Virus record (IMG/VR): IMGVR_UViG_3300012931_000759 | Coordinates: 124,001-188,000 of that record | Length of the DNA stretch: 64,000 nt | Reading direction: 5' to 3' (one strand) | Shown here: positions 28,837-63,345 of the stretch, piece by piece | Position numbering within the stretch: position 1 is the first letter of the stretch | How the letters are laid out: every line of letters starts with the position of its first letter | Notes under the pieces: generated by a model | The model's database searches: none | Told to the model about the DNA's origin: nothing | What the model saw: the letters and a program-made list of their open reading frames with translations, nothing else | Position numbers and translations under genes: made by a program

Positions 28837-28892
28837 CGCGCCAGCCGGAAATGCCGGATGGAGGAAGACACCTTTACGGAGGAGAGGATTCC

Positions 28893-38171: not shown

Positions 38172-38348
38172 ATGATAGTGCCGAACACGCGGCGCCTAAA
38201 ACGCTTCGCGGTGATATACAAGGGAAGATCTTGCGGCCCGACCACGTCGTGGCCGCAAACCATTTGGTTTGATAAGGAGGAGGAGTACGATGAGGCGGTT
38301 CGCAAGCTGAAGACGCTGGTCGTGGATCTGAATGCCAATGCCGATTAG
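38172..38348 (+). CDS. Small 58-aa hypothetical protein (below the ORF-track cutoff)
   Basis: ATG 38172 to TAG 38348 fills the gap before the terminase (MIVPNTRRLKRF...). Confidence 0.4.
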   Translation: MIVPNTRRLKRFAVIYKGRSCGPTTSWPQTIWFDKEEEYDEAVRKLKTLVVDLNANAD

Positions 38349-43100: not shown

Positions 43101-44451
43101 CCTGCTTGATGCCGCCACGGAGGGCGATGGGACGGTCAAGTCCAGTAAATACGGTACGGAATCTGTTGGTATCCGCTACACCACGGTATCCAAGCAACTG
43201 GCGGACGACATCCAAGAGATCGCCTTCAGGTGCGGCTATGCGCCCATCATGCGACGCGACCAGAATGGTCAAGGCAAGTGGTTCTGGGCGGTTGACTGGT
43301 CGAACACGTCTTATGGACATTTTCCCACGGTTTACGGCAATCGCAAAGCCAAGAGGAACGGTGGTGGTGCGACCTTCGAAAGGATTCCGTACAACGGCGA
43401 TGTGTTCTGTTTCGAAGTGCCAAACGGTCTGCTGGTGGTTCGGCGCAATGGGCATATCTCGATCCAGGGCAATTGTAAATTCGCGCAGGCCGACGACCTC
43501 ATCAACCCGATTACGTTGGTGAAGATCGGCGGCACGGGCGAGGGCGAGTTCCACCCGGACGACGCACAACTCGAGGCGTGGCGCAACGTTATCGAGGAGG
43601 CTCAGTACGACAAGAACTTCAAGATTGTTACTCACGCGGGCGTAGTGATCGAGCGCGTGGGATCCTCCGGAGCTGTTCTCGACATCAGCCAGGACATGGA
43701 TCTCATCATCAAGAACATCATGTGGGGTCTCATGGTACCGCACGCCGTGATCGACACTGAGAGCGCCGTGTATGCTTCGGCCTCCATTGGTCTAGAAGTA
43801 CTGCGGCAGCGATACTTCAACTTCCGCAACATGATAGCCAAGTGGTTGACGAACAAGATTTTCTCGCCCATCAGCGATCTCCAGGGATTCTATAGGGCGG
43901 AAGCTGGGTACAAGAAGCTAATCGTTCCCGAGGTCGAGTGGAACCACATGAACCTGTATGACCTACAGGATTACATCAGCAATGTCTCTAGCCTGGTGAC
44001 GGCAAAGCAGGTGTCTCTACAGACGCTGTACAGGAGCCTCGGACTCAATTACGAGGAGGAACGTCAGAAAATGCGCAAGGAGGCGATCAACGACGCTGTA
44101 CGCCAACGCGAGGAACAGGCGCTGTCCAGCATGTCCCTCCTGGAGCTTAGGTCTCTTGACCCCGAACGCGAGATCATGGAGTCTACGCAGGCGGCGCAGC
44201 CGATGGGAGGGCCCTCCATGGGCGCACCTGGTGCGCCGGGATCCGATATGGGCGCTCCGCCGATGGGTGGAGGGGCTCCCCCGATGGGCGGTGGAGGCGG
44301 CGGTCTTCCGGGAGGATTGCCCGAACTAGCCCCGCCGCCCGGTGAAGCAATGGCAGGGCCTGGTGGTGCCGGGGCACCACCTCCTGGGGGAGCAACCCCT
44401 CCGCTCGGACCGGGTGGGCCGGGGGCTCCCCCGGCAGGGCCAGGGAAGTAG
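40195..44451 (+). CDS. Portal protein (about 660 aa after splicing) with two inteins and a Pro/Gly-rich C-terminal tail
   Basis: Directly after terL; HPLVRNAI, YWKLGEAF, VSHLK..PYDVRGTS portal-like motifs. Confidence 0.8.
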   Translation: MVDQSRRATGRTPGPKVLRTSPKLANVLSPIRRGALQDEVENGIVREGAQYGGSMLRRGIAEPMPADLDKGLARGVWMEGGRPTSGKKAAEGSQALIAHSPSFRKQAAVGVMNGGVGSTAGAPVERLAPEVYSPLFVMANLNLPRDRITVNAWCFLPGTMVWMADGTRKPIEEICVGDMVLSGEGLPRRVTTVFRRHVDEEIVGLRVKNSQETVWCTTNHGFNAVKADAVRCHDKTTFVKCKPDGDGCFCSRCGRKDDPYVFGKVESGQLGERDILYMPVPKLEPVSNDPLLSNPEAIELLGYYAAEGFVAHNRVTFSLGSHEKQLAVRIEELVGKLFAEGQIHTRSDRSTEIYVDCSNAKLAAFVLRHCGQGSLTKRLSFELMSVEPGLLLRFLVAWLDGDGGQEKYNSGIFVGNTSSENLAWQMRMLCLRCGLVAHVFRAHSQKTMVSPTNGETYPAAPRYYVKIRGKSALKLAECFSSEFYRFAAIERSYERDGCCFIHKDKAIQWINTVKRSGYIGFVHNIEVEIDHTYVVGYGVSVRNCRNFFDLHPLVRNAITMHATYPISKISIRCQDKKVQQFFEDMIEEMDLLGALGDISLEYWKLGEAFPYAELDENTLKWKRIVVQNPDYIHVKKMVIASEPVISLRPDAVLQRLVMSNNPADVQLRKQIPQHIVYHVRRGENIPLDNFNVSHLKMLSSPYDVRGTSVIVAAFKDLMLYDKIRECFSIDSEIMTERGFKTYDEIKEDDRLATFNPATGIMEFQPYTARIKRRHDGDMCHFHGKKVDVLVTPNHRMWLAQSRSHGGGYHDFGIIEAQDVKKGYFYKLRCVADWVGKELKTISVLGHEMPAETYMRILGHLVAEGCIHYKNINNYKYKVGISQNLDQNELIFGHICQSMVDLARFCGKHLGTYDHRNTKGFSVNKPSEMRNWTISSKELAAHFAAEIGTNSHDKHLPRWVFDLSPRLLRILLDAATEGDGTVKSSKYGTESVGIRYTTVSKQLADDIQEIAFRCGYAPIMRRDQNGQGKWFWAVDWSNTSYGHFPTVYGNRKAKRNGGGATFERIPYNGDVFCFEVPNGLLVVRRNGHISIQGNCKFAQADDLINPITLVKIGGTGEGEFHPDDAQLEAWRNVIEEAQYDKNFKIVTHAGVVIERVGSSGAVLDISQDMDLIIKNIMWGLMVPHAVIDTESAVYASASIGLEVLRQRYFNFRNMIAKWLTNKIFSPISDLQGFYRAEAGYKKLIVPEVEWNHMNLYDLQDYISNVSSLVTAKQVSLQTLYRSLGLNYEEERQKMRKEAINDAVRQREEQALSSMSLLELRSLDPEREIMESTQAAQPMGGPSMGAPGAPGSDMGAPPMGGGAPPMGGGGGGLPGGLPELAPPPGEAMAGPGGAGAPPPGGATPPLGPGGPGAPPAGPGK
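40654..41823 (+). mobile_element. Portal intein 1 (390 aa) with LAGLIDADG domain
   Basis: CFLPGT start, CTTNH block B, LLGYYAAEG and WLDGDG, ends VRN before +1 Cys. Confidence 0.9.
42370..43473 (+). mobile_element. Portal intein 2 (368 aa) with LAGLIDADG domain
   Basis: CFSIDSEI start, VTPNH, LGHLVAEG and TEGDG, ends IQGN before +1 Cys. Confidence 0.9.
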
Positions 44452-46083: not shown

Positions 46084-49000
46084 ATGGCGTGGCCATCCCT
46101 TTCGCGACGCGCTTCCCCCGGCATATCCCCGGTGGCCCTGATGCGCCTGACGGAGATTGATGATCCTGATGAACTACTCAAAAAGTTCAACAGAGATGAT
46201 ATTATAGTAGAACATAAATACGATGGCTGGAAGGCGCAGATCATCAAGGACGGGGAAAAGGTCCGCATCTTCAGCAGGCGCGGCGAGGAGGTCACTGGGA
46301 ACTTCCCGGCGATCGCCAAGGAGATGGTTGGTCTTCCTGACGGTACCCTTGTCGAGGGCGAGCTGGTCTACTGGGACAAGGGCAAACAGGATGTGACGAA
46401 GGTAACGTCCCTTGCCGGAAGCTCGGTCGACAAGGCCTTGGAGAAAGTGAAGGGGCTGCCCGGCAAGATGAAGCTCCATATCTACGACATCCTGTGGCTC
46501 AAGGGCAAAAACGTGGCCGACAGACCCTTCTCCGAGAGGCGCAAGCTGCTTGAGTCGGCTGTGAAGACCTCCGATACGGTCCTCCTGACAAAGCAGTACC
46601 CTTTCGCCAAGTGGCAGAATGCCATGAACACGGCAGTCGGCCAAGGTGGCGAGGGCATCGTACTCAAGCTCAAAGGCACCAAGTACCAGTACAAGCCCAA
46701 GGGCGAGTCCGAGCCAAAACCAAAAGATACGATGTGGAAGTATAAGGGCGGGGCTGGCAAGCACGACTCCGACGACTATGTGGTCTACGGCACGACCAAG
46801 AGCAAGACCGGCAAGCTCATGGCGCAGTTCGGCCAGTACTACAAGGGCAAGCTGTACGCCATCAGCGAGATCGACAACTTCTCGGCCGAGAACGAAGCCG
46901 AGATCGAGAAGCGCCTGAAAAAGGGTCCGTTCGTCATCGAAATTGGTTTCCAGGAGCGCGTGCCGGGCGGGCTGCGGCACCAGAAGTTTCTCAGGTTTCG
47001 GGACGACAAAAAGCCCAAGGATGCCACCATGCACGAATTCCATGCGGAGCATATCGGCGAGTTCGAACCAGCCAAGATGGAGCGGAAAGCAATGTTTGCG
47101 CTGGCGGGTACTCCCGATCTCGCCAAACTTGTTACGACGCTGGAACGGGCGGTTGGAAAAACAGACCCCATGAAGACGGGACCGACAAGGATCGGCGACG
47201 TGGGTGGTGTGGATGGCGACAAACTGTTCCAGCTCGTATCCAAACTTGAATCGAACGGTAGGACAGATGTTGTAGGAGACGCTGGAACGTCCTTTGGACC
47301 GACACAAATTCATGGGCCCTACCTCCTGGCCAGGCTTGCTGGAATGTCCGGCGCGCAGGCGGCCACCGGCTTGTCGCCCGATGAGATGCGCAAACTCTCC
47401 TCTTCCTGGCTGGACACCCTGAGGCAGCTTCGCGGCGCGCGCGTTTGGAAAGAGGTTCCAGTAGATCAGGACGAGGCGCGGAGATTACCTAGGATCAAGC
47501 GCCTGGAGAAGACCTTTATCCGCAGGCCGGATATGGTCATCGAGCAGAGGGACGGCCGGTATGTCGGTCGCATCTTGGATCTGGACGCCCTGCGAAGCCT
47601 GGGCTTCGATGTCGACTCGCAGATCTTCAGGAACGCCTTGCGCAGGATCTACGCGGAGTACATCACCGACAATGTCGCACTTAGCGGCCTGGCCCAGGCC
47701 CATCTGGGCTCCTTGGCCCCCGAGGCCTTCTACAAGTTCAAAAGGCAGTTCAACCCCGCCGGTATCCGGAAGAACAAGCCCCTAGCATCCCTGCTGGAGA
47801 GGGCCTCAACTAGCGACCTAACCAGCAGGATCGCTGCCGTGGTCCGGATGGTCGAGAAATCCGGGTACGACACGACTGCGCCGGGCGCGTTCAGCATCCC
47901 GCAGCTGGTCTTCATCGCCAACGGGAGCGGTATAGGGCGGGTCCAGCAGTTCCTCATGGACAGGAAGCCCTTCGCGCCGGGGAACTTACACTACCTACAG
48001 AGCCCCAGGTTTAAAGCCGCCATGAGCGCCTTTGTGAAAAACGATCCCGATCTTCGTGGAATGGCCACCCAGCTGCTCGCCGGGCTTCCTTCCGGCGACG
48101 GCATAGCTGGCTTTAAGGGGGAGGTTGCCGCTCGCATCGCGGCGCTGCTCGGGGCGGACAGCGAAGAGATCAGCCGGTCCGATGCAGTGAGGATGTTAAC
48201 GTTCGCCGACGGCCATCCAGATCGAGGGCGTGGCCGCTATCCGCGCTGGAATCCGGCCCTCCAGGCCCGCGAGATCATGAACTTGGTCGACCGCTGGCTG
48301 AACTATGAGAACATCCGGCCAATTGACCTGAAGGCGGTGGGCGTGACGCTCATTCGCGTCGACAGGGAGCAGGATCCGCCAAAGCTCGTCCTCTGGATCA
48401 TGGGGGACATTCAGGCGCTACAACGCCTGCTGCCGAGAAAGATGTGGGGCATGCCCGTTGTTCTACACTCCGACATCCCGAGGGCGACAACGGAGCTACC
48501 GGCCGTCACGGAGTTCGAGGAGGAACCGACGCTCGTTGACGTGGAGTCAAGAATGCCGACTAAGCTGTTCCAGGAGTACAGTGATCTCCTGGTGCGGGTA
48601 CGCGCCGAACTAAAGAGGACGCACAGGCACGTTCCCGAGGATCAGCTAAGACGTACGGTCTTTCTACACATTGCCGAGGAGCTGGGATACGATCTCGGGG
48701 AGCTGGAGAGAACCCTGGGTGAGCACGCCTGGCTCAGATTCTCCCATTGGCAGCCTCCTTTGTCCAAGCTGGCGATGGGCAATCGTGGCGTGCTCGCGTT
48801 CCCTGGACAGTACGCTGAGGATATCAAATCCGGCAAGATGGAACGGACGATCAGGCCTGGTGACATGCCGGTCGAGCCGGAGGAAGTGGTAGACGCTATC
48901 ACCTATTCGGGAGGACCTATTTGCCGGATCAAGATTCTGCTTAAGGAGATCATGAGCCTGCCGCGTCTCGCCAAGGCGTTCGGCAAGCATGTGGCCAGGT

Positions 49001-49980
49001 CCCTCGAGCACCGTTTCGGGCCGGACAGGCGCTTTATGGTCATCCGTTTCACTCGCTTCGGGGAGCAGGATGCCGACGACGGTGAACTTGACGAGAAAAA
49101 GCGCGGCGAGATCCTGATCGACAAGGATGGGATCGAACTCACGCGCGGGCAGATCTACGACCACTACGCCAAACCAGCGATCCGCAAACAGATCATGTCC
49201 CGCATCAAAGGCAAGCCTGTGCTAGTCTATCTTGGTGTGGGCAAGAACGAGAAGATCTTGAAGCGCAACCATGACAGTAAACCCATCGTCATTTCCAGCG
49301 ATGACCCAAAAGGGGATGGAGACAGTGGAAATTACTGGTACTGGGTCAAACGTCGGCTATTGGCTATTCATCAAGTGTTCGGTACGAAAACAGGTATTGG
49401 TTTTGTCGACCTGGATCTACATGGCGGATACCCACTCGATAAGAGCAAGGAGTACGCTAGGAAGGCAGTTGCGGCCATCAAGGAAAAGTATGGCGTTCAG
49501 CCGAAGGTCTACCAGAGTGGCGGCACTGGGCTCCATGTGGAGTTTGAGCTTGGCAAGGAGGTTGGTATCGACGGCCTGCGCAAGGAGTTGCGTGAGCTGC
49601 TCGACAAACTGAACGAGGATTTCGAGGGCGCGACGACCGGCCTTGTGAAGGGAAAAGGTATGCGGACGGATGTGAGTACACTTCACAACAAGGGCAGCCT
49701 ACGTGTGCCTGGTTCATTGGGTGAAACTTGGGGCAAGATGAAAAAGTCTTTGTCCCAATCGACCGATGACGATTATCAGAATGGGCAATTTGGTGGCAAA
49801 TATTCGGACACTGGCCCATTTGGCGATGGTGGTTCTATTGTGCCTATGCCCTATCAGTCTTCGGCTCCCGAACAGGTCGGAGCTGCGACGGCCTCTGAGA
49901 GAATCAAGTTATTCCGAATTGTTGCGCAGCAGTACGATGATGAAGTGAAGCCTGGAACAATAGCTCCTGGAAAATTTTGA
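46084..49980 (+). CDS. Mosaic protein: ATP-dependent DNA ligase + lysozyme/transglycosylase-like + unknown + ASCH + LigD-type primase-polymerase
   Basis: EHKYDG, EGELV, YDIL, EGIVLK, LRH..F.RFRDDK; LESNG..GDAG.SFGPTQI; LAFPGQYAEDIKSGK..TIR; FVDLD, SGGTGLHV, RVPGS. Confidence 0.85.
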   Translation: MAWPSLSRRASPGISPVALMRLTEIDDPDELLKKFNRDDIIVEHKYDGWKAQIIKDGEKVRIFSRRGEEVTGNFPAIAKEMVGLPDGTLVEGELVYWDKGKQDVTKVTSLAGSSVDKALEKVKGLPGKMKLHIYDILWLKGKNVADRPFSERRKLLESAVKTSDTVLLTKQYPFAKWQNAMNTAVGQGGEGIVLKLKGTKYQYKPKGESEPKPKDTMWKYKGGAGKHDSDDYVVYGTTKSKTGKLMAQFGQYYKGKLYAISEIDNFSAENEAEIEKRLKKGPFVIEIGFQERVPGGLRHQKFLRFRDDKKPKDATMHEFHAEHIGEFEPAKMERKAMFALAGTPDLAKLVTTLERAVGKTDPMKTGPTRIGDVGGVDGDKLFQLVSKLESNGRTDVVGDAGTSFGPTQIHGPYLLARLAGMSGAQAATGLSPDEMRKLSSSWLDTLRQLRGARVWKEVPVDQDEARRLPRIKRLEKTFIRRPDMVIEQRDGRYVGRILDLDALRSLGFDVDSQIFRNALRRIYAEYITDNVALSGLAQAHLGSLAPEAFYKFKRQFNPAGIRKNKPLASLLERASTSDLTSRIAAVVRMVEKSGYDTTAPGAFSIPQLVFIANGSGIGRVQQFLMDRKPFAPGNLHYLQSPRFKAAMSAFVKNDPDLRGMATQLLAGLPSGDGIAGFKGEVAARIAALLGADSEEISRSDAVRMLTFADGHPDRGRGRYPRWNPALQAREIMNLVDRWLNYENIRPIDLKAVGVTLIRVDREQDPPKLVLWIMGDIQALQRLLPRKMWGMPVVLHSDIPRATTELPAVTEFEEEPTLVDVESRMPTKLFQEYSDLLVRVRAELKRTHRHVPEDQLRRTVFLHIAEELGYDLGELERTLGEHAWLRFSHWQPPLSKLAMGNRGVLAFPGQYAEDIKSGKMERTIRPGDMPVEPEEVVDAITYSGGPICRIKILLKEIMSLPRLAKAFGKHVARSLEHRFGPDRRFMVIRFTRFGEQDADDGELDEKKRGEILIDKDGIELTRGQIYDHYAKPAIRKQIMSRIKGKPVLVYLGVGKNEKILKRNHDSKPIVISSDDPKGDGDSGNYWYWVKRRLLAIHQVFGTKTGIGFVDLDLHGGYPLDKSKEYARKAVAAIKEKYGVQPKVYQSGGTGLHVEFELGKEVGIDGLRKELRELLDKLNEDFEGATTGLVKGKGMRTDVSTLHNKGSLRVPGSLGETWGKMKKSLSQSTDDDYQNGQFGGKYSDTGPFGDGGSIVPMPYQSSAPEQVGAATASERIKLFRIVAQQYDDEVKPGTIAPGKF

Positions 49981-50025: not shown

Positions 50026-53000
50026 GTGGTGCTGATGGTCAGCCTTCGTAGACGAATCCTCATGCTGGTGGCCCCGAAAGGGTTCTTTGAACCCGAATAT
50101 TCGGCATCACGTGCCGTGTTTGCCGATAGGGGCATCGATGTGGCCGTGGCCACGGCCGGTAAGTCGGCTGTGAGTGCGCAGGGCACAACCATCAGGGTCG
50201 ACCTTGACGTAGCGGACGCTGACGCAAAGGACTTCGACGCACTGTTTGTGGTCGGCGGCAAAGGTATGATCGAGTTTTCGGACGACAAGGCCGCTAAGCG
50301 CATCCTGCGCAAGTTTGTGCGCGTCGGCAAGCCGGTAGCCATGATCTGTCACGCCCCGCTCTTGGCGGCAAAGGCGAAGGTTGCTGCCGGTCGGCAGATG
50401 ACCGGATGGCCAGAGATCCGTCCCGATATGGTGGCCTCCGGAGCCAAGTGGACCGGCATGCCGGTGGAGCGGGACGGCGATCTGTTTACAGCCGTGGGAC
50501 CGGAGGATGCCGAATCCCTCGCCGACATCCTGGTCCGGCGGATGGATGGTGCCCCGACGCTCTCCGAGGCAATGTTAGATGACAACGCCGCCATGCGCAA
50601 ATTGGCGCGCCTGTGGCGCGCCGCAGCAAGGCTCGACAAGCCGATGACGGACGAGGAGGCCGAGCGCTGGTTGACGGAGTTTGAGCGCAGGGACGAGGGC
50701 GAGGAGGAGCCACCTTCTGAACCTACCACTCCCAAGCCGGTTCTAGCACCCGCGCCGAAATCGGTCCCGGCGCTCGCCGCCAAACCCAAACCTGAACCAG
50801 AGTTTACGCCCGACCCAGAGAGGCGCGATCAGATCACACATAAGCCGAAAAACGAATGGAATATTGTGGTGGAGCTTCGGCCACCCCGCACAGACGGCGG
50901 CTGGCCGGAACTTCCCGAGACCCCTCCAGTCGGATTCCCGTTCCCAGCTGAGGCGCTGAAGGACAGCCCTTCCATCAGGGCGCTATTCCAGAAGCCTGAG
51001 ACCTGGCGCGCACTCAAAGAGATTGCCGCCAATCCCAACAAGAGTGGTACAATACAGTCATACCTCGTGCCGACGCTAGTGCTCGTTATCGGCAAGGCCT
51101 GGTGGGAGATCAACAAGCGTCGCAAGCAGCTCGGCAACGCGCCGTTCGGCCTTTTCTCGTCCGACGAGTACAAGACCATACAGGACGCCAATGTCCCCAT
51201 GGAGGAGACGCAGATTGGACGGGCCTTCATTGCGCTGATCAACTGGCAGGTTACCAAGATACTCCAGTTCTACCTCGCCACCGGCAAGATCGAGAATGCT
51301 CGGCTGGATGGCTATATCTATGACGCCCTGAACAAGCACATGGTGAACGATGCGGGCAAGCGGCACGGATTCGAACCCAAGCGCCAGCCCGCCTGTGCCT
51401 ACTGTCGCAGCAAGCGCGTCATAGAGACGACGCCTCCGTTCCTTTCGCAGATCGGGACGCACACTGTCCAGGAAAGGAATCTGACGCGAAGCCGTCCCCT
51501 GTTCAAGTGCCCAACCTGCGAGGATCTGATCGAGACCAAGGAACAGGAGCTTCGCCTGAAGGAACAGGGTGTCCGCAACGCGGAAGAGAGTTTGCGCGAT
51601 ATAGCCAAGAATGTCCGGAACACCAAGGACAATCTGACCAAGGATCCGGACAGTGCCGAGCTGAAGCAGCGCCTGGTGAACTATGAGGCTATGTTGGCCA
51701 GCTACCGCCCACAGGTAGAGGAACTTGCCAAGGAGCGCAACACCCTGAAGGGCGAGATCCAGAACAGGCGCAATATGATAGGCGTGCCTTATTCGCATCT
51801 CTCTTGTATTAACGAGGCCTGCCCAGGCGCCGCTATACCCCTCACGTTCGTGGACTGGGACAACTCTTTCTGGAAGACGCCTGCTGGAGATGTGGCCAGG
51901 CGTGACCTAGCCAGCTTCTACCACATCGAGAAGAGTCCCGAAGGTCAGAAGGCTGAGGATGCGCCACAGGAAAGCGTTCAGCCTACATCTGAGCGCGCCG
52001 GGAAAAAACCGCCCCCGTGGATGTGGCACATTCCGTTCCGCTGCCCGTTTGATGGGCTTGTTTTCACGCCGCATGAGGCATTCGGGAAGGGGCGTGTCGG
52101 CGAGGACGGGACAAGACTTGGTGGCTTGTTTGTTAACCCGCCTCGCGCCACTAGGTGGTGGAAGCCGATGTCTCTCGAGCAGCAGCGGATGCCCGATGAC
52201 GAGGGCCAGAAGCAGCGCATCGAGGAGATCCGGTCGTTGACCGGTATCGAAACCACCACGGACTCGCCGGATTTCCTGCGCTCTCAGGAGATGAAACAGG
52301 AGAACGCCTGGCTGGCGGACCGCCTGCGCGAGGATATCCTCCGGCAGAGGGAAAATTTTATGAAAGAGCGCGGAACGCTTGAGGGCCATCGCGAGGTCAA
52401 GCTCCGCAGGACTATGTTCGACGCTTTGCTTGAATGGGCATATCTACATCCCATACATCTTGTGGCATTCTATAGCGCGCGTTCCCAGGCTACACAGAAG
52501 CCGCAGACGCACGTGCCAGTCGGCACCGAGCCAGTTGTGGACGGAAAGAGTGGGGAAGTCAAGGAGCATCTCGACGAAAAGAACATTAAGATGTCCCCAA
52601 AGCAGGCCGAGCGGATCATCTCCGCAATCATACAGGTGTGGTTCGAGAAGATGCTGGCCGAGAAGGATGGGCTGACCATCCTCAAAGGTAGGCCGGGCAA
52701 AGGGCGTTCAGGCAAGCTCACGGGACAGGGCAACTACCTGGCCATCAAGGAAGTCGACGGCGTAGAGCCGGACGGCTTTTTTGTCACGACGGTACAGCGA
52801 GCGTTGGACGGGCAGCTCGAAGCGCTTTGTAATCTCCGCACAACCAGCCCTAAGACTCGCGGGGCCGGATACTACCCCGCTCCATGGATGGCGCTTGTAC
52901 AGGGTATCTGGGACTACGACGGCCCAGCCGAGCGAATGGGTATCTCTATGCCCCTCGTGGAGGGGCAGAAGCTGGTCGCGGGCAAGAGAAGCCATCTCCA

Positions 53001-55344
53001 CGAAATGGAGACCCACAACAGCCATGGCATCCGATTCGACCCCGAAACGACGCTGAAGGAGGGGGATCGCATTGTTGTGAAGGCCCTGCTGATGCCGCGT
53101 AACTCCTCCTGGCCTCCCAATAAGTTCGTTAGCCATATCCGGCAAGGTCTGAAGTGGGACATCGGCGATGCCAAGGTCTACTACTCGGCGCTGCGCCGCC
53201 GCCAGAAACCTAAACCCTCGGACGAGCAGGTTATGGCCTTCTGGACGAAAAAGATGCAAGAAGCCAACATGACCGAGAAACTTGAGAAGTTTTATGAGAC
53301 GGTATACGACAGGCTGCGCCACAAGGAGGACCTCTCGGCTTTCGAGATAAGGCTGTTGGAGCAGTTTGAGCAAGCCAAGGAACAGGAGGCGTCCGACACC
53401 ATGGTTTCCGAAGCCAAGGATCCCCTCGCAAAATACCAGGGCAAGCGCGAATTCGACAAGACCACGGAGCCGAAAGGTAAGGAGTCGGAGGGTGGGAACA
53501 GGTACCGCTTTGTCATCCAACTACACCATGCCAAGAAAGCGGGTGACCATTACGATTTACGCCTAGAGAACGACGAGGGCGCATTGTCGTCGTGGAGTAT
53601 CCCGAAGCACCGGCTACCCAAGGGCAAGGAGAAGTTGCTCGCTGTCAGGACCGAAGACCATCCGGTCGAATACCTGAAGTTCAAGGGCGAAATCCCGGCG
53701 GGCGAGTATGGGGTCGGCACGATGGAGATCCACGACTCGGGAACCTACGAGGAGATCGAGGCCGGCAAGACCAAGATCGTCTTCTGCTTGAAGGGAAAGA
53801 AGGAGAAGGGGGCCTACAAGTTATTCCGGGCAGGCGAGGGAAACAAATGGATGGTGATGGAACATACAGAAAATAAACAGGAAAAGAAAGAGGCAGCCTG
53901 TGGCTCGAGTGTAACTCTATTCTCCAAACGAATTGGCAGTGTTCCGTTGTCAAAGATGGCGGCGCACAGTGGTGCGATGTTGGCTCTCATGGCTCCGTCG
54001 GCCATTGCCAGGAAGATGCGCAAGGCCAAGATGGTAGAGGACGAAGATCTGTCTGATACCCTTCACATGACTCTGTTGTACCTCGGGAAAGCTGCTGACC
54101 TCAGCAAAGAGACGCTGGAAGCAGTCCGGAAGGCGGCAGAGAAGGTGTGCGAGCGGCACGACCCGCTAAAGATGGGTGTTTCGGGTGCCGGGACATTCAC
54201 TCCGGAAGAAGATGGCACTCCGGTATACGTGGTACCTAATGCGAAGGGATTGAGCGCTCTACAGGCCGACCTGGAGAATGTTATCGGCAGCATCGTCGAC
54301 CTGCCCTCTGAGCACGGCTGGGTTCCGCATATGACTGTATGCTACTGCCGCGACGGGAAACCGGAACTCCCAGACCTGACGGAGAAACTGGAGTGGACCG
54401 CTGATAAGGTGCGTCTACAGGCTGGTGACGAGAAGATCGCGGACATTCCCATTGGCCGCAGGAAAAAGGGTGGAAGCGAGCTTCCGCTGTCCAGGCGGGC
54501 TGCGCTGGAGCGGTTGCCGATAGCCGCTGATCCTGTAATGTGGACGGATGAACAGTTGGTGGAAGCCGTCCGTCGACCGGAACTGTTCGGAAACGACAAA
54601 GATCGGTATCGGGCAGCAGTCGAACAGTTGGCCAAACGCGGTCTGGTGAAAAAGGTGGAGCCAACAGACATCGGCGAATGGCGTGAGCGCGGTTGGTGGC
54701 TACTAATGTGGGCGGGGATCCCACTCGCTTTCTACAACAACGATGCTGCTGCCAGTATGGCTAAACGGCTGCTCGCAGAGGATTTCGCCAAGGACGGCAC
54801 GCAGCCTATTGCTGCGCGTAAGTTTGATCCGATCCATTCCCGTCTGCGTTGGCAACTCGACGAGGTCATGGATCTGGGCCCGGCCGAGGACTACGAGGAG
54901 GCTGATCACCGGCGCGGTAGGGCAGGAACGGCCGTGGATGAACTGGTTACGCATCCTATGTACGCAAAACGGCGCAGGGAATTCGCCGAGAAGGCATTGA
55001 ACATCGCCAAGGCTCCCGCTGGTTTCAGACCGTTCAAAGAGTCGGTTCCCTCAGGTGCGCGACCAACCGAAACTAACGCTGACGCAGCTGAGGCTCGCAT
55101 CACGGACATGCGGTTCGGTAACACCCTGCCGGAGTTTACTGGACCGCTGGTGGATTCCCAGGAGGCTGCGAAGGACGCCGGTGACGAACTGGTCGAGGAC
55201 ACCGCCAAGAGACTTGCCAAGCGGCTGGAGGCCGAGCGGGCCGGTCTAGATCCTGAAAAACTGGCGGACGACGATGCGCTGGAACTAGCCCTGATCGAGC
55301 CGGACGAGGTTCCGCTCTCGAAGCGGACGGAAACATACCAATAA
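50026..55344 (+). CDS. Mosaic protein: DJ-1/PfpI + multi-zinc-finger domain (paralogue of 10351..12372) + LigD 3'-phosphoesterase + 2H phosphoesterase + unknown domain
   Basis: AMICHAP; FVIQLHHA..HYDLRLE..SWSIPK..AVRTEDHP..Y..F.GEIP.GEYG.G; LHMTL and PHMTV. Confidence 0.85.
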   Translation: MVLMVSLRRRILMLVAPKGFFEPEYSASRAVFADRGIDVAVATAGKSAVSAQGTTIRVDLDVADADAKDFDALFVVGGKGMIEFSDDKAAKRILRKFVRVGKPVAMICHAPLLAAKAKVAAGRQMTGWPEIRPDMVASGAKWTGMPVERDGDLFTAVGPEDAESLADILVRRMDGAPTLSEAMLDDNAAMRKLARLWRAAARLDKPMTDEEAERWLTEFERRDEGEEEPPSEPTTPKPVLAPAPKSVPALAAKPKPEPEFTPDPERRDQITHKPKNEWNIVVELRPPRTDGGWPELPETPPVGFPFPAEALKDSPSIRALFQKPETWRALKEIAANPNKSGTIQSYLVPTLVLVIGKAWWEINKRRKQLGNAPFGLFSSDEYKTIQDANVPMEETQIGRAFIALINWQVTKILQFYLATGKIENARLDGYIYDALNKHMVNDAGKRHGFEPKRQPACAYCRSKRVIETTPPFLSQIGTHTVQERNLTRSRPLFKCPTCEDLIETKEQELRLKEQGVRNAEESLRDIAKNVRNTKDNLTKDPDSAELKQRLVNYEAMLASYRPQVEELAKERNTLKGEIQNRRNMIGVPYSHLSCINEACPGAAIPLTFVDWDNSFWKTPAGDVARRDLASFYHIEKSPEGQKAEDAPQESVQPTSERAGKKPPPWMWHIPFRCPFDGLVFTPHEAFGKGRVGEDGTRLGGLFVNPPRATRWWKPMSLEQQRMPDDEGQKQRIEEIRSLTGIETTTDSPDFLRSQEMKQENAWLADRLREDILRQRENFMKERGTLEGHREVKLRRTMFDALLEWAYLHPIHLVAFYSARSQATQKPQTHVPVGTEPVVDGKSGEVKEHLDEKNIKMSPKQAERIISAIIQVWFEKMLAEKDGLTILKGRPGKGRSGKLTGQGNYLAIKEVDGVEPDGFFVTTVQRALDGQLEALCNLRTTSPKTRGAGYYPAPWMALVQGIWDYDGPAERMGISMPLVEGQKLVAGKRSHLHEMETHNSHGIRFDPETTLKEGDRIVVKALLMPRNSSWPPNKFVSHIRQGLKWDIGDAKVYYSALRRRQKPKPSDEQVMAFWTKKMQEANMTEKLEKFYETVYDRLRHKEDLSAFEIRLLEQFEQAKEQEASDTMVSEAKDPLAKYQGKREFDKTTEPKGKESEGGNRYRFVIQLHHAKKAGDHYDLRLENDEGALSSWSIPKHRLPKGKEKLLAVRTEDHPVEYLKFKGEIPAGEYGVGTMEIHDSGTYEEIEAGKTKIVFCLKGKKEKGAYKLFRAGEGNKWMVMEHTENKQEKKEAACGSSVTLFSKRIGSVPLSKMAAHSGAMLALMAPSAIARKMRKAKMVEDEDLSDTLHMTLLYLGKAADLSKETLEAVRKAAEKVCERHDPLKMGVSGAGTFTPEEDGTPVYVVPNAKGLSALQADLENVIGSIVDLPSEHGWVPHMTVCYCRDGKPELPDLTEKLEWTADKVRLQAGDEKIADIPIGRRKKGGSELPLSRRAALERLPIAADPVMWTDEQLVEAVRRPELFGNDKDRYRAAVEQLAKRGLVKKVEPTDIGEWRERGWWLLMWAGIPLAFYNNDAAASMAKRLLAEDFAKDGTQPIAARKFDPIHSRLRWQLDEVMDLGPAEDYEEADHRRGRAGTAVDELVTHPMYAKRRREFAEKALNIAKAPAGFRPFKESVPSGARPTETNADAAEARITDMRFGNTLPEFTGPLVDSQEAAKDAGDELVEDTAKRLAKRLEAERAGLDPEKLADDDALELALIEPDEVPLSKRTETYQ

Positions 55345-57581: not shown

Positions 57582-58153
57582 GCGGACGACTTTTGAGGCT
57601 GGCCAAGGCCATCGCCGTGATCGATGTCAAGGAGCCGGAGGGCGGCTGCTTTCCCGGTGCCGAGAAGGTTTTAGAAAAGCAGAAAGGTCCCGGCGGCATG
57701 TGGCGCGAGGACGAGTTGCTGGACTATGGGCGCGCCAAAGGCACCGTGCCGGACAAGAAGCCGAAAGATCTCGACCTGAGGGCCGAGGACCTCGCCAACC
57801 GGCTCGAGGAGGCTGTGGCTGCCATTGGCGACTGCGTGGCAATCCTGAAGGAATTGGGAATGGACGAGGGGAAGGCTGGGGACAAAATCCTCTCCATCGT
57901 CCGGGACGAGACGCTCGGACCGGAGAGGATTCCGGGCGGGTTCTCGGAGGGCAAACCGGACTCCGAGTTCGACCCCGACCAGCTGGAGAAGGGCATCAAG
58001 GTCGAATTGGAGCATACGGGCAACATCGGGGTCGCAAAAGAGGTCTCCAAAGACCATCTTTGCGAAAACAAGCGTTATTACGATTACTTAGAAGAAATGG
58101 AAGAAAAAGCCGAAAAGAAGGGCGATTCGTGTAGGTTGGCGGATCAAACATGA
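57578..58153 (+). CDS. Hypothetical protein with C-terminal DUF5661-like domain
   Basis: FDPDQLEKGIKVELEHT..AKE..KDHL.E..RYY; AAGGAGG and ATGA overlap at 57578. Confidence 0.7.
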   Translation: MSGRLLRLAKAIAVIDVKEPEGGCFPGAEKVLEKQKGPGGMWREDELLDYGRAKGTVPDKKPKDLDLRAEDLANRLEEAVAAIGDCVAILKELGMDEGKAGDKILSIVRDETLGPERIPGGFSEGKPDSEFDPDQLEKGIKVELEHTGNIGVAKEVSKDHLCENKRYYDYLEEMEEKAEKKGDSCRLADQT

Positions 58154-60818: not shown

Positions 60819-61202
60819 ATGGCGACTCCACCGCTCTCCAAGAGGAGCAATTCCACACCGCTGCTTCCCATCTCGAAGCGGGCGCAGGATCCCGTGCGCC
60901 GCACGGCTGAGTCCATCCTGAAGATCATCACCTTCATCCTTTTCCGCGTGGCGCCGAAAGACAAGACACGATACCTACAGCGTATTAGAGGAAAAATACT
61001 AAGGATTCCAACAGGGCAAGTGAGTCTGAAAAAGTTGCCGCAAACAGCGGCCATTGGACAAGCTATCAGTTTGACCAAAAACATCTTGTCCGGTTTGAAC
61101 CCCTTCTTTGTCAAAAGAGTGGTGGACGAACTGGCGAACCTTATGCTTCTACAGGTGCCCGTTCGCCAGACTCTACCAATCCAGCGACCTAGGGTCCAAT
61201 GA
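60819..61202 (+). CDS. Small basic hypothetical protein with tandem PLSKRS/PISKRA N-terminal motifs
   Basis: MATPPLSKRSNSTPLLPISKRA; GGAGG upstream. Confidence 0.75.
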   Translation: MATPPLSKRSNSTPLLPISKRAQDPVRRTAESILKIITFILFRVAPKDKTRYLQRIRGKILRIPTGQVSLKKLPQTAAIGQAISLTKNILSGLNPFFVKRVVDELANLMLLQVPVRQTLPIQRPRVQ

Positions 61203-61855
61203 TGAAAACCTGTACGCGCTGTAACCAACCAAAATCCAAAGACGAATTCTACGCAGATCATAGGGTTTACGACGGACGACGAAGTGTTTGTAAACAGTGT
61301 CAAGATACTGTGAATAATCAATATCGCACTCAGCATAAGAATGAGGTGGAGGCACAGCGGGCCGCCTATCGCGAAGCGCACAAAAACGAGAACCAGGCGT
61401 ATCAGAAGCAATATCGTGCCATCCACAGACAAGAACTATCTGAGAAAAAACGGGCATACTACAATCAGTCCGATGTGAGGGATGCGAAACAACTCCATGA
61501 CAGGGCGTACCATGCTAGTAACAAAGAAAGTCGCGCGGAGACCATGAAGCGTTGGCGGCAAACTGACGCCGGACAGGCCTCCAGAGCAAATTCGTGTGCC
61601 AAACGTCGCTCCAGGGTTGGAGACAACATCATCTCAACAACCGAGTGGCAACTCATCATGTCCAATGCCAACTGGCATTGCGTTTATTGTGACATCGCGC
61701 TCACCCCAGAAAACCGTAGTCTGGATCATGTGGTGCCTCTATCGAAAAACGGATCACATTGCGTAGACAATCTAGTGGCATGTTGTAGAACATGTAATTC
61801 CAGTAAAAAAGACAAACCTGTCCTGGAATTTGTCTCCAACAGAGGTCAGATATGA
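61199..61855 (+). mobile_element. Free-standing HNH endonuclease
   Basis: CTRC..CKQC N-terminus; CVYC..DHVVPLS..G.H..NLV.CC..CN..K. Confidence 0.88.
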
Positions 61856-63345
61856 TTCCCCTCAGCAAACGCGCGATCCAGGTCGTCATCGAGCCGCTTG
61901 ATCCTGCGGTCCAGCAGGCTGTGACGCGCATCAATGCGCGCGACCCTGCTCTTCTTGCGCGTGTCCACAAGATTGTGGTACACCCAGGTGGCGGAGCCGA
62001 GTTGGGTCATGTTCAATCCGGAAAAGGACATGATCCGCAGGAGATCCACCTTTTCAAGGGGCGCATAGAGCAGATGGTTCGTCAGCAGACCAGCGCCACC
62101 GGCGTGAAGCCAACCCCGACGGATTTCGCCCAGGCTTTGGAACAGGCAATAGTGGAAGTAATCGGCCATGAGGCCGGGCACATCGGGCCGGAGCGGCCGA
62201 TTGTGCCGGGAGCGCAGCCTTTCCTTGGGGAACCGGAGGCTGAGACGAAGGCCAAGGAGACCGTCCGGAGGATCTATCCCGGAGCCGTCGCGCACGCGGC
62301 CATCGAACTGGACGACATCAGACGGAAATTCATGCCAGATGCCCCCATGGGCGAGCCGGATCTGGCCTTTGTGGCAAAGGTTGCCGCCGGAAACGGCGCT
62401 GGCGCCCTGCGCGACGGGTTGAGGATCTTGCGCCACGGCAGCGTGCCTGTGGCTTTGGCTATGGGACAGGCCTGCGTGTTCAACAGCCAGGTCGCGCGTC
62501 GCACGGATGTGGCCAGGAAGTTGGGCTTCCTAGTGAGCCTGTTTGGGGCGCTGCCGAACTCCAACGATTTCGCGATGGCGCTTGCCGCCTGCCAAACGGA
62601 CAACGGCCTCGAGCCGACAGGGAAGCTCGACCGTCCAACCATAGCGCACCTGCGCGCCCGCATGGCGCCCTCCGAGGAGTTCCCGCGCAACTTCGGCATG
62701 GTGGCCGAGGGACTGTATCGCGGAAGGCAGCCCGACAGCATCGGGCAGCTCGCGGCCCTGCGCGACAGGCTGGGCGTCCGCCGCGTTGTGACGCTGAACG
62801 ACGACGGCCCACCGATCGCCGACTGGTGCCGCCAGCTGGGCCTGGGGCACCTCCACGCGATGCTGTCGTCCGGCGCTCCCCAGGAGCCCGGATGGCAGGT
62901 TTTCGGCCCCGAGCTGTCGGATTTCCTGCTTGAGACCCCCACATTCGTCCATTGCCGCCATGGAGCCGACCGGACGGGCGGCGTCGTGGCGCGGTGCCGC
63001 ACCGAGATGGGTTGGCCCTGCGACCTGGCATACGCCGAAGCCAAAGCCTTCGGTTTCAAGGACCGTTTCCCCGACATGGTCGACCGGTTTACCGACGCCT
63101 GCGGACACGACCCGCACGGGCACCGGCACCCGCCCATCGACACCGCCCTGATCCGCCGCATCATGGGGGCGGAGCTTGCCGCCAACGCCCCGCGTCCTTC
63201 GGTCGAGCAGGATCTGCTCGAGCCCACCCCGTTTGACCTCCACTACACCACCGACAACAACAGCTACGAGAGTGGGATCGATACGATCCTGTCGCCATAT
63301 TCCATCATGTCTATTCCGACAGGTTTTCCGGGGGCGGGGAGATGA
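61852..63345 (+). CDS. Mosaic protein: HExxH module + peptidoglycan-binding-like helix pair + tyrosine/dual-specificity phosphatase
   Basis: PLSKRA N-terminus; IGHEAGH; CQTDNGLEPTGKLD..T; LYRG.QP, FVHCRHGADRTG (CX5R). Confidence 0.8.
   Translation: MIPLSKRAIQVVIEPLDPAVQQAVTRINARDPALLARVHKIVVHPGGGAELGHVQSGKGHDPQEIHLFKGRIEQMVRQQTSATGVKPTPTDFAQALEQAIVEVIGHEAGHIGPERPIVPGAQPFLGEPEAETKAKETVRRIYPGAVAHAAIELDDIRRKFMPDAPMGEPDLAFVAKVAAGNGAGALRDGLRILRHGSVPVALAMGQACVFNSQVARRTDVARKLGFLVSLFGALPNSNDFAMALAACQTDNGLEPTGKLDRPTIAHLRARMAPSEEFPRNFGMVAEGLYRGRQPDSIGQLAALRDRLGVRRVVTLNDDGPPIADWCRQLGLGHLHAMLSSGAPQEPGWQVFGPELSDFLLETPTFVHCRHGADRTGGVVARCRTEMGWPCDLAYAEAKAFGFKDRFPDMVDRFTDACGHDPHGHRHPPIDTALIRRIMGAELAANAPRPSVEQDLLEPTPFDLHYTTDNNSYESGIDTILSPYSIMSIPTGFPGAGR

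What the first reader, a model, noticed from the sequence alone, without database searches (positions are those of the whole stretch)
53962..54460. Motif-bracketed 2H phosphoesterase, a possible Acb1-like anti-CBASS or RNA-repair enzyme
Seen: two HxT motifs (LHMTL, PHMTV), with PLSKMA before and PLSRRA after the domain. Established: T4 Acb1 is a 2H phosphoesterase that degrades cyclic-nucleotide immune signals, while other 2H enzymes process 2',3'-cyclic phosphates. Inference: a pre-packaged counter-defence enzyme.
Basis: partly seen in the sequence, partly recalled or inferred. Interest (0 to 1): 0.68.

Follow-up and report, generated by a model that had tools for sequence, protein, structure and literature searches.

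The report
2H enzyme cassette in phage polyprotein
A LigT/ThpR-type 2H phosphoesterase sits as a ~180-residue cassette, bracketed by a conserved linker motif, inside a 1,772-residue multi-enzyme protein next to the portal gene of a 340-kb phage; the same linker marks module borders in giant proteins of related huge phages and probably marks protease cuts that release ready-made repair or counter-defence enzymes.

Summary
Window 53962-54460 encodes a 2H phosphoesterase domain (Pfam PF13563, E 6.6e-16) with both HxT motifs invariant in 121 relatives, and it is bracketed by PLSKMA and PLSRRA. It is not a gene of its own. It is residues ~1311-1490 of one 1,772-aa ORF (50026..55344) that also carries DJ-1/PfpI and LigD 3'-phosphoesterase domains. 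That ORF follows terminase, portal and a second giant ORF (ATP-dependent ligase plus an AEP primase-polymerase-like module) in a 340-kb phage.

The bracket generalises to phi-x-[L/I]-S-[K/R]-[R/K]-A. This core occurs 75 times in 52 related giant proteins, against ~1 expected. It lies between Pfam domains and at extreme N- and C-termini, and it even flanks a stand-alone 2H gene. In an 81%-identical relative a different cassette sits between the same two linkers.

By sequence and by fold the module is LigT/ThpR-like (Z 17-18), not Acb1-like (Z 9.4, no Pfam Acb1 hit).

Best reading: a protease-releasable 2',3'-cyclic phosphodiesterase cassette of a polyvalent, probably capsid-delivered polyprotein. 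I favour nucleic-acid end healing; degradation of nucleotide immune signals is not excluded. Cleavage, packaging and substrate are inferred, not shown.

The parts
50026..55344 (+). Giant ORF (1,772 aa, P0001): polyvalent polyprotein that contains the finding
   Evidence: the same protein is on record as P0004
50050..50532 (+). DJ-1/PfpI domain (residues 9-169), Cys-His pair kept; candidate in-cis protease or deglycase
   Evidence: Pfam E 2.3e-34; nearest PDB AtDJ-1D, PH1704 protease I/deglycase, PfpI, YhbO; conserved at the start of giant ORFs in two related genomes
53518..53829 (+). LigD 3'-phosphoesterase domain (residues 1165-1268)
   Evidence: Pfam LigD_N E 1.3e-25; PDB 3p43 E 4.7e-30, 3p4h, 2lj6
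53944..53961 (+). Linker motif 1 (PLSKMA), N-terminal border of the 2H cassette; a second, partial copy lies 8 residues upstream
   Evidence: 19.2 bits
53956..54495 (+). 2H phosphoesterase cassette (residues 1311-1490); Pfam core 54046-54417
   Evidence: Pfam; AF2 model pLDDT 92.4; fold Z 18.1 to 5h7e and 17.3 to E. coli LigT
54064..54072 (+). First HxT catalytic motif (His1347, Thr1349)
   Evidence: invariant His, nearly invariant Thr in 121 sequences
54328..54336 (+). Second HxT catalytic motif (His1435, Thr1437)
   Evidence: invariant His, nearly invariant Thr in 121 sequences
54484..54501 (+). Linker motif 2 (PLSRRA), C-terminal border of the 2H cassette
   Evidence: best motif score in the genome, 20.8 bits; homology to relative P0005 resumes exactly here
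54502..55311 (+). Conserved C-terminal module of unknown function (~270 aa), present after the linker in several relatives and twice in P0006
   Evidence: no Pfam family
55312..55329 (+). Linker motif 3 (PLSKRT), 8 residues before the stop
   Evidence: 15.1 bits
46084..49980 (+). Upstream giant ORF (1,298 aa, P0002). It holds a linker at residues 5-10 (46096-46113), an ATP-dependent ligase (46159-46704), an internal linker (48757-48774), then an ASCH-like plus AEP primase-polymerase-like module (48775-49977).
   Evidence: Pfam DNA_ligase_A_M E 1.4e-31. LigD_Prim-Pol is sub-threshold here (E 0.018; PriS 0.0068 by profile) but over the cut-off in 50%-identical homologues P0185 and P0188. Motifs.
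40195..44451 (+). Portal gene interrupted by two inteins; places the polyproteins in the head-gene block
   Evidence: Hint and LAGLIDADG Pfam hits. Portal identity is read by eye from the extein sequence and from its position after terminase; no Pfam portal family matched it.
38332..40182 (+). Terminase large subunit
   Evidence: Pfam GpA_ATPase E 5.8e-19
30691..31698 (+). 335-aa protein of unknown function that starts with the linker motif (residues 4-9)
   Evidence: (13.8 bits)
60819..61202 (+). 127-aa ORF with two linker motifs 12 residues apart at its N-terminus. It matches the part after the linker of a 299-aa ferritin-domain protein in relative L001.
61852..63345 (+). 497-aa protein with weak PTP-type phosphatase hits; the linker motif starts at residue 3

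Best explanation
The finding is one cassette of a polyvalent polyprotein of a huge phage. The cassette (~180 aa) is a catalytically intact 2H phosphoesterase of the LigT/ThpR type. On each side is a short conserved linker, phi-x-[L/I]-S-[K/R]-x-A. I take this linker to be a protease recognition site at which the giant precursor is cut into single enzymes. The two giant genes lie directly after terminase and portal. Relatives of this 2H family are fused to prohead protease, MuF and portal domains. I therefore infer that the precursor or its pieces are loaded into the capsid and enter the cell with the DNA, so the enzymes act before any phage gene is expressed. Most likely activity: hydrolysis of 2',3'-cyclic phosphate ends (end healing). 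It would work beside the LigD 3'-phosphoesterase in the same protein and the ligase and primase-polymerase modules of the neighbouring polyprotein. Together they would repair phage DNA, or RNA and tRNA, cut by host defence nucleases. Shown: domain identity, fold class, intact catalytic residues, motif enrichment and placement, and cassette exchange between linkers. Inferred: cleavage, the protease, packaging and the substrate.
For: Domain and class: Pfam PF13563 E 6.6e-16. The profile of 121 relatives hits PH0099 at 2.4e-16, Deinococcus 2',3'-cyclic phosphodiesterase at 1.7e-15 and Thermus LigT at 1.9e-12. The AF2 model has pLDDT 92.4. Fold matches are Z 18.1 (5h7e) and Z 17.3, rmsd 2.2 over 154 residues (E. 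coli LigT).
Linker: the core [LIF]S[KR][RK]A occurs 75 times in 52 related giant proteins (59,556 aa) against 1.0 +/- 1.1 in shuffles. Ten copies lie within 15 residues of the N-terminus and 3 at the C-terminus. Spacings are mostly 140-280 aa. The motifs lie between Pfam domains, never inside them, in P0001, P0005, P0008 and P0009. The stand-alone 192-aa 2H gene P0013 begins and ends with the motif. In P0005 a different 229-aa segment lies between the same two linkers; the LigD_N module is 75% and the C-terminal module 81% identical, and the C-terminal homology resumes exactly at the second linker. Codons of the motif differ from site to site, so selection acts on the peptide. The motif follows the phage clade, not the 2H domain: it is absent from more distant 2H relatives.
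Packaging: the gene order is terminase, portal, two small ORFs, then the two polyproteins. Of 75 multi-domain relatives of the 2H module, 11 carry Peptidase_S78_2 (XkdF prohead protease), 4 Phage_Mu_F, 1 portal and 1 S78. The nearest viral models are actinophage 'capsid morphogenesis' and 'structural' proteins. The 2H gene of Arthrobacter phage Kovu lies between portal/protease and the capsid gene.
Repair context: LigD_N sits 40 residues upstream. Ligase and AEP modules are in P0002. The same linker-delimited proteins elsewhere combine topoisomerase IB, LigD_N, LigD_Prim-Pol, ligase, 2H and a CCA-adding-type PolyA_pol+HD. This is the only 2H, and P0002 holds the only ligase found in the genome.
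Published frame: polyvalent proteins with 2H domains fused to MuF or portal, predicted to be packaged and processed (PMC5512222).
Against: No protease was identified. Pfam S78, S77, XkdF and the HK97 capsid family all find nothing in this genome, which is estimated 84% complete. PHROGs and the ESM Atlas give nothing for the neighbouring ORFs. There are no proteomic or N-terminal data, so cleavage and packaging are inference only. No linker lies in the first ~1,300 residues of P0001, so DJ-1, about 1,000 unassigned residues and LigD_N would stay as one piece. No Ku, RtcB or polynucleotide kinase-type partner was found, which weakens a complete repair pathway. In other phages the 2H cassette sits with SET and topoisomerase IB and without LigD_N, so neighbours are shuffled and need not act in sequence. 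Iyer et al. 2017 favoured RNase or signal-degrading roles for 2H domains of polyvalent proteins. Fold class does not fix the substrate: other 2H enzymes cleave 2'-5' oligoadenylate or cGAMP.
Confidence: 0.5

Rival explanations
1. Signal eraser. The released or embedded 2H module degrades nucleotide immune messengers (CBASS cyclic di- or trinucleotides, type III CRISPR cyclic oligoadenylates, 2'-5' oligoadenylate-like signals). It would work like Acb1, poxvirus cGAMP phosphodiesterases or rotavirus VP3, while belonging to the LigT branch.
For: All of these enzymes share the 2H fold and chemistry, and they are still matched at Z 9-14. A pre-delivered enzyme would suit signals made early in infection. 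Iyer et al. 2017 proposed this role for 2H domains of polyvalent proteins. One relative in each of two sets gives a weak Pfam Acb1 hit (2.5e-5; 3.2e-4). Many polyvalent modules are counter-defence-like: ADP-ribosyltransferases, Arr, SET, phosphatases.
Against: There is no Pfam Acb1 hit for this protein. Acb1 scores E 0.036 against LigT-type at 1e-16. Acb1 and cGAMP phosphodiesterases are the most distant functional 2H classes by fold apart from CNPase. The immediate partners are end-processing enzymes.
Confidence: 0.3
2. The linker is not a cleavage site. It would be a repeated docking or packaging signal (for portal, scaffold or a chaperone) or just a conserved flexible hinge, and the giant protein acts uncut.
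For: No protease was identified. N4 virion RNA polymerase and some plasmid polyvalent proteins travel uncut (PMC5512222). Copies of the motif at N-termini could equally be targeting tags.
Against: Copies sit a few residues from the C-terminus and before short tails. There are tandem copies with nothing between them. Both ends of a stand-alone 192-aa enzyme carry the motif. All three are what trimming sites leave and are hard to explain as hinges. A basic residue at a fixed position followed by a small residue resembles a protease site.
Confidence: 0.2
3. Cytoplasmic early polyprotein. The two giant genes are expressed in the cell and processed there, never packaged. Their place beside the portal gene would be incidental.
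For: There is no virion proteomics. The capsid and protease genes could not be located, so the extent of the 'head block' is only partly defined. Homing endonucleases and other non-structural genes are interspersed.
Against: The same order after the portal is kept in relative L001, and in G001 the portal, the DJ-1 ORF and the 2H ORF lie within about 15 kb. Relatives of the 2H family are fused to prohead protease, MuF and portal.
Confidence: 0.2
4. Offensive RNase. The 2H module acts like Usb1 and trims or cleaves host RNA, leaving 2',3'-cyclic phosphate ends.
For: Usb1 is matched at Z 14. Iyer et al. 2017 raised this by analogy with RNase domains fused to MuF and portal.
Against: It is closer to the LigT/ThpR cyclic phosphodiesterases than to Usb1 in both sequence and fold.
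Confidence: 0.08

Closest known systems
LigT/ThpR RNA 2',3'-cyclic phosphodiesterases (E. coli ThpR 5ldi/5ldm, Deinococcus 5h7e, Thermus 1iuh, Pyrococcus 1vdx)
   Same: Two HxT motifs in the H-x-T-L-x-aromatic-L-G context, the same size (~180 aa) and the same bilobed fold. They are the best sequence and structure matches.
   Different: About 15-20% identity. It is not a free-standing cellular gene but a linker-bracketed cassette in a 1,772-aa phage protein. The residue after the second HxT block is a conserved Tyr, where I recall Arg in cellular LigT (from memory, not tested).
Acb1 anti-CBASS nuclease (Pfam PF23474; PDB 7t26/7t27)
   Same: 2H superfamily, phage-encoded, HxT chemistry. It could share a counter-defence logic.
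   Different: No Pfam Acb1 hit; profile E 0.036; Z 9.4 and TM 0.44. Acb1 is a small stand-alone protein.
Polyvalent proteins of phages and conjugative elements (Iyer et al. 2017, PMC5512222)
   Same: Many unrelated enzymatic domains in one polypeptide, encoded beside portal and terminase. 2H is among the listed domains. Packaging, injection and proteolytic release are predicted.
   Different: That paper ties processing to in-cis peptidase domains. It reports that these 2H domains are never linked to RNA ligases, and a term search of it finds neither LigD nor DJ-1. Here every module border carries one short conserved motif. The partners are LigD-type ligase, polymerase and phosphoesterase modules, and a DJ-1/PfpI domain heads the protein.
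Capsid-internal proteins processed by the prohead protease (T4 Alt and internal proteins; phiKZ and SPN3US inner-body and ejection proteins)
   Same: A short lineage-specific motif at N-termini and inside head-delivered proteins; enzymes delivered with the DNA. SPN3US: PMC10052503 and PMC5694885, abstracts only. The T4 and phiKZ cleavage motifs are from my own knowledge.
   Different: Those motifs end in Glu (L/I-x-E; S/A/G-x-E). This one has Ser followed by a basic residue, and it joins many exchangeable enzyme cassettes in tandem. The protease here is unknown.
2H domains inside viral multi-enzyme proteins and polyproteins of eukaryotic viruses (rotavirus VP3, torovirus pp1a, coronavirus ns2)
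   Same: A 2H module embedded in a large viral protein or protease-processed polyprotein; matched at Z 12.6-13.8 and in BFVD.
   Different: They belong to the AKAP7-like branch and degrade 2'-5' oligoadenylate. The viruses and hosts are unrelated.
Bacterial LigD non-homologous end-joining enzyme
   Same: The ligase, primase-polymerase and 3'-phosphoesterase modules are all present.
   Different: They are spread over two polyproteins, separated by linkers and unrelated modules, and joined by a 2H module. No Ku was found.

Membership tests
2H phosphoesterase superfamily | Two H-x-T/S motifs | tested here: met
   His1347/Thr1349 and His1435/Thr1437. Both His are invariant and both Thr nearly invariant in 121 sequences.
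2H phosphoesterase superfamily | Family profile match over the curated cut-off | tested here: met
   PF13563 59.1 bits (cut-off 27) and PF02834 26.2 bits (cut-off 23.3)
2H phosphoesterase superfamily | Bilobed alpha+beta 2H fold | tested here: met
   AF2 pLDDT 92.4; 69 PDB chains at Z >= 8, and every listed match is a 2H protein
LigT/ThpR branch | Closest to LigT/ThpR among 2H branches by sequence profile | tested here: met
   E 2.4e-16 to 1.9e-12 for LigT-type, against 3e-6 for AKAP7-like, 8e-5 for ns2 and 0.036 for Acb1
LigT/ThpR branch | Closest by structure | tested here: met
   Z 16-18 for LigT/ThpR, against 15 for YjcG, 13-14 for Usb1/AKAP18/VP3 and 9-10.6 for Acb1-type
LigT/ThpR branch | 2',3'-cyclic phosphodiesterase activity on RNA ends or nucleotides | not testable with these tools
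   needs an enzyme assay
LigT/ThpR branch | Free-standing cellular gene | tested here: not met
   It is embedded in a 1,772-aa phage ORF.
Acb1 (PF23474) | Family profile match | tested here: not met
   no hit at E <= 0.01; PDB Acb1 E 0.036 and 0.15 by profile
Acb1 (PF23474) | Structural nearest neighbour | tested here: not met
   7t26 at Foldseek rank 36, TMq 0.44, Z 9.4; BFVD Acb1 models at rank 36 and below
Acb1 (PF23474) | Cleavage of CBASS cyclic oligonucleotides | not testable with these tools
   needs an enzyme assay
Polyvalent proteins (Iyer et al. 2017) | Two or more unrelated effector or enzyme domains in one polypeptide of a phage or plasmid | tested here: met
   DJ-1/PfpI, LigD_N and 2H in P0001; ligase and an AEP-like module in P0002
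Polyvalent proteins (Iyer et al. 2017) | Encoded with portal/terminase packaging genes | tested here: met
   terminase 38332..40182, portal 40195..44451, polyproteins from 46084
Polyvalent proteins (Iyer et al. 2017) | In-cis processing peptidase (zincin-like or other) | tested here: inconclusive
   No peptidase family was found in P0001 or P0002. The N-terminal extension of relative P0005, which shows an H-E-x-x-H motif by eye, has no homologue in this genome. The DJ-1/PfpI domain is a possible protease, but it is nearest to both deglycase- and protease-annotated structures.
Polyvalent proteins (Iyer et al. 2017) | Packaged in the virion and delivered to the host | not testable with these tools
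   only indirect support
Prohead-protease-processed capsid cargo | A shared short motif at N-termini and internal sites of several head-block proteins | tested here: met
   P0001 three times, P0002 twice, and the ORFs at 30691, 60819 and 61852
Prohead-protease-processed capsid cargo | An identifiable prohead protease, and the same motif in the capsid or scaffold protein | tested here: not met
   No S78, S77, XkdF or HK97 capsid family hit. The capsid gene was not identified. The portal N-terminus is only weakly motif-like.
LigD-type end-joining set | Ligase, primase-polymerase and 3'-phosphoesterase present | tested here: met
   PF01068 1.4e-31 and PF13298 1.3e-25. The polymerase is assigned only through homologues over the cut-off.
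LigD-type end-joining set | Ku partner | tested here: not met
   no PF02735 match in the 84%-complete genome

The most novel reading that the evidence does not exclude
A clade of huge phages uses one short peptide code (phi-x-L/I-S-K/R-R/K-A) as a universal cut site. The code lets the phages string exchangeable enzyme cassettes into capsid-delivered polyproteins. In this phage the delivered set amounts to a Ku-independent LigD-like ligase/polymerase/3'-phosphoesterase kit plus a 2',3'-cyclic phosphodiesterase. The phage would then bring its own nucleic-acid end-repair machinery into the cell to undo nuclease-based immunity before any gene is expressed. The DJ-1/PfpI domain could be the processing protease.
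Probability: 0.3. Interest if true: 0.8.

Novelty: new variant of a known kind. Interest (0 to 1): 0.62.

Why it matters
If the linker is a cleavage code, it gives a sequence-only way to parse giant 'hypothetical' proteins of uncultivated huge phages into single enzymes, and to list what these phages may carry into the cell. The list so far: topoisomerase IB, ligase, primase-polymerase, 3'-phosphoesterase, 2H, CCA-adding enzyme, SET, phosphatases and DJ-1.

It would also show that counter-defence or repair cassettes are swapped between fixed linkers. That is a simple route to rapid diversification.

For the 2H enzyme itself, this case separates 'works like Acb1' from 'is an Acb1'. A LigT-type enzyme in a delivery context makes two roles directly testable: healing RNA or DNA ends, or erasing immune signals.

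Tried and rejected
1. The first AF2 model, from 8 close sequences, had pLDDT 50.7 and was discarded. It was repeated with 121 sequences.
2. I searched this genome for the protease and capsid with Pfam S78, S77, XkdF-type S78_2 and HK97 capsid. All were blank. PHROGs on ten neighbouring ORFs was blank or insignificant. ESM Atlas on the 374-aa and 393-aa ORFs gave no usable lead.
3. The N-terminal extension of relative P0005 carries an H-E-x-x-H motif (seen by eye, no family match). I looked for a homologue in this genome and found none.
4. I tested whether the motif could be a DNA-level repeat that promotes recombination. This is rejected, because the codons differ at every site.
5. A cut strictly after a Lys-Arg pair (kexin-like), or between two basic residues (omptin-like, from memory), is unlikely. 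This phage's own sites have Met, Leu or Thr in place of the second basic residue.
6. Ku, RtcB and a dedicated RNA ligase were not found.
7. Megablast of 20 kb against phage GenBank records gave no match. tblastn found only the 2H and DJ-1 pieces at 30-43% identity.
8. A literature search for the motif string returned only noise. Searches on polyproteins and polyvalent proteins in jumbo phages did not turn up this motif. This is not proof that it is undescribed.
9. The word-index search with the cut-out domain found a single stand-alone relative. The exhaustive profile search was therefore used.
10. No reads tool, alternative genetic code or complex prediction was needed.


Full report
WHAT IS THERE

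The window is bases 124001-188000 of a single 340,392-bp virus contig. GC is 55.7%, estimated completeness is 84%, and genes lie almost entirely on the + strand. The interval 53962-54460 lies inside one open reading frame, 50026..55344, of 1,772 residues (P0001).

Pfam finds four things in it:
- DJ-1/PfpI, residues 9-169, E 2.3e-34.
- LigD 3'-phosphoesterase (LigD_N), residues 1165-1268, E 1.3e-25. PDB 3p43 confirms it at 4.7e-30.
- 2_5_RNA_ligase2, the 2H family, residues 1341-1464, E 6.6e-16.
- LigT_PEase, E 9e-6.

A third copy of the flank lies 8 residues before the stop.

Upstream lie the large terminase (38332..40182), a portal gene holding two inteins (40195..44451), two small unassigned ORFs, and a second giant ORF (46084..49980, P0002). 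P0002 has an ATP-dependent ligase domain (E 1.4e-31) and a C-terminal module that looks like an AEP primase-polymerase. For P0002 itself that assignment is sub-threshold: LigD_Prim-Pol E 0.018, and PriS 0.0068 with NHEJ polymerase 0.16 by profile. The D-x-D and G-x-G-x-H type columns are invariant in the alignment. Two 50%-identical homologues pass the Pfam cut-off.

WHICH KIND OF 2H ENZYME

A shallow alignment gave an unusable model. The exhaustive profile search then returned 2,965 relatives, 37 of them at E <= 1e-30. With 121 of them the model reached pLDDT 92.4.

Sequence profile against the PDB:
- LigT/ThpR-type proteins: 2.4e-16 to 1.9e-12.
- AKAP7-like: 3e-6.
- Coronavirus ns2: 8e-5.
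- E. coli ThpR: 2e-4.
- Acb1: 0.036.

Structure:
- LigT/ThpR: Z 16-18, with E. coli LigT at rmsd 2.2 over 154 residues.
- YjcG: Z 15.
- Usb1, AKAP18, rotavirus VP3: Z 13-14.
- Acb1-type phage enzymes: Z 9.4-10.6.
- Penguinpox cGAMP phosphodiesterase: Z 9.1.

So the module is a LigT/ThpR-type 2H enzyme and fails the membership tests for Acb1. This lowers 'is an Acb1'. It does not settle the substrate.

THE BRACKET IS A GENERAL LINKER

Full-length relatives are giant modular proteins of 988-3,067 aa from other large phage contigs. One of these contigs is a 305,730-bp NCBI assembly and another is a 441,904-bp IMG/VR genome. In these proteins the 2H module is again flanked by the motif. The motif also separates SET from topoisomerase IB, follows LigD_N, and so on.

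- Among the 28 best-scoring representatives, 12 have a recognisable motif on both sides, 161-186 residues apart.
- The core [LIF]S[KR][RK]A occurs 75 times in 52 clade proteins against 1.0 +/- 1.1 in shuffles. These proteins are related, so the sites are not all independent.
- Ten copies lie within 15 residues of the N-terminus and three at the C-terminus. Spacings are domain-sized.
- A stand-alone 192-aa 2H gene starts and ends with the motif. It sits after a LigD_N gene and an HNH endonuclease gene.
- In P0005 the LigD_N module is 75% and the C-terminal module 81% identical to P0001. A different 229-aa segment lies between the same two linkers, and homology resumes exactly at the second linker.
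- The motif is written with different codons at each site.
- It is confined to the closest clade of 2H relatives. It therefore belongs to the phage lineage, not to the domain.
- Within this phage it also starts P0002, the ORFs at 30691 and 61852, and, twice in tandem, the ORF at 60819.

Short tails after C-terminal copies, tandem copies with nothing between them, and copies at both ends of a single-domain protein are what trimming sites leave behind. I therefore read the motif as a protease site. This is inference.

WHO CUTS, AND WHERE

This is unknown. Standard prohead protease and capsid families are not detected. The neighbours of the portal gene have no recognisable family.

One candidate is the DJ-1/PfpI domain at the head of P0001. 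It keeps the Cys-His pair. It is nearest to AtDJ-1D and to Pyrococcus PH1704 'protease I/deglycase', PfpI and YhbO. It heads a giant ORF in the two other near-complete genomes examined, within about 10 kb of the portal gene in both, and in G001 directly upstream of the 2H ORF. It could equally be a deglycase.

IS IT PACKAGED

The evidence is indirect:
- The gene position after terminase and portal is kept in a relative.
- Of 75 multi-domain relatives of this 2H family, 11 are fused to XkdF-type prohead protease, 4 to MuF, 1 to a portal and 1 to S78.
- The best viral structural matches are actinophage proteins named capsid morphogenesis or structural protein.
- In Arthrobacter phage Kovu the 2H gene lies between portal/protease and the capsid gene.
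- Iyer et al. 2017 described such polyvalent proteins, listed 2H among their domains and predicted packaging and processing (PMC5512222).

WHAT IT PROBABLY DOES

The modules that travel in these linker-delimited proteins are mostly nucleic-acid end enzymes: topoisomerase IB, ATP-dependent ligase, LigD primase-polymerase, LigD 3'-phosphoesterase, 2H, and a PolyA_pol+HD pair typical of CCA-adding enzymes. In this phage the 2H cassette directly follows LigD_N. It is the only 2H in the genome, and the only ligase found is in the neighbouring polyprotein.

I therefore favour end healing of 2',3'-cyclic phosphate termini, about 0.45 within the overall picture. Such termini are produced by metal-independent defence RNases (established knowledge). 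The cassette would work with the 3'-phosphoesterase and the ligase.

Several points count against a complete pathway. Ku, RtcB and a kinase were not found. Module neighbours are shuffled between phages. Iyer et al. argued for RNase or signal-degrading roles.

Degradation of cyclic-oligonucleotide or 2'-5' signals remains a serious rival (about 0.3). An RNase role is a minor one.

NOVELTY AND VERDICT

The 2H domain alone is a new member of a known kind. Polyvalent phage proteins with 2H domains are published. I did not find the following described (a limited search):
- the single conserved linker code at every module border;
- cassette replacement between fixed linkers;
- the split LigD set plus 2H beside the portal gene of huge phages.

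I rate the whole as a new variant of a known kind, interest 0.62. 

Noticed in passing
window 40195-44451: The portal gene is interrupted by two inteins (Hint plus LAGLIDADG domains). Its N-terminus has a weak motif-like stretch (Q-S-R-R-A from residue 4), and portal N-termini of two related genomes are only loosely similar there.
   Followed up: partly
window 24971-27799: A UDP-glucose/GDP-mannose dehydrogenase gene is split by an intein with a LAGLIDADG domain (Pfam).
   Followed up: no
window 55668-56864, 58150-59016, 60141-60815, 61199-61855: Four endonuclease-like genes are interspersed among the head-block genes: DUF4379 treble-clef zinc fingers; NUMOD3 with a Vsr/DUF559-like nuclease; GIY-YIG with NUMOD3; and HNH. 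In L003 an HNH gene separates LigD_N from the stand-alone 2H gene, as if inserted at a linker.
   Followed up: partly
window 60819-61202: A 127-aa ORF begins with two linker motifs 12 residues apart. In relative L001 a 299-aa protein at the matching position, just before the ~490-aa linker-led protein, carries a ferritin domain and a near-identical linker context at residue 192. This looks like an emptied cassette slot.
   Followed up: partly
window 61852-63345: A 497-aa protein has the linker motif starting at residue 3. It gives weak hits to dual-specificity/tyrosine phosphatase families, including the 'Swiss Army Knife' PTP domain, and a peptidoglycan-binding repeat. Orthologues in L001 and L006 keep the N-terminal linker.
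   Followed up: partly
window 34059-34829: A 256-aa protein has a PolyA_pol head domain (nucleotidyltransferase of the CCA-adding type) and a motif-like P-L-S-R-L near its C-terminus. In P0188 a PolyA_pol+HD module is a cassette of a linker-delimited polyprotein.
   Followed up: no
window 27970-28836 and 28833-30560: A 288-aa protein has an internal motif-like site (Q-S-K-R-A at residue 138). It is followed by a 575-aa protein with an internal duplication, in the most GC-rich part of the window (63%). These are possible scaffold or head proteins, and no family was found.
   Followed up: no
P0029-P0045 (distant 2H relatives): Many distant relatives of the 2H module lack the clade's linker. They keep a related L-[S/T]-K-[A/G/S]-[E/Q] stretch shortly before the first strand. 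This may be an older cut site of the fused prohead proteases, or simply part of the domain.
   Followed up: no
window 14842-18294: The phage encodes a full-length DNA polymerase III alpha subunit (PHP, NTPase, finger and HhH domains).
   Followed up: no
P0005 residues ~1-310 (locus L001 7749-): The orthologue in the 305-kb relative has an extra N-terminal extension with an H-E-x-x-H motif (possible zincin peptidase, seen by eye). The extension is absent from this genome.
   Followed up: partly
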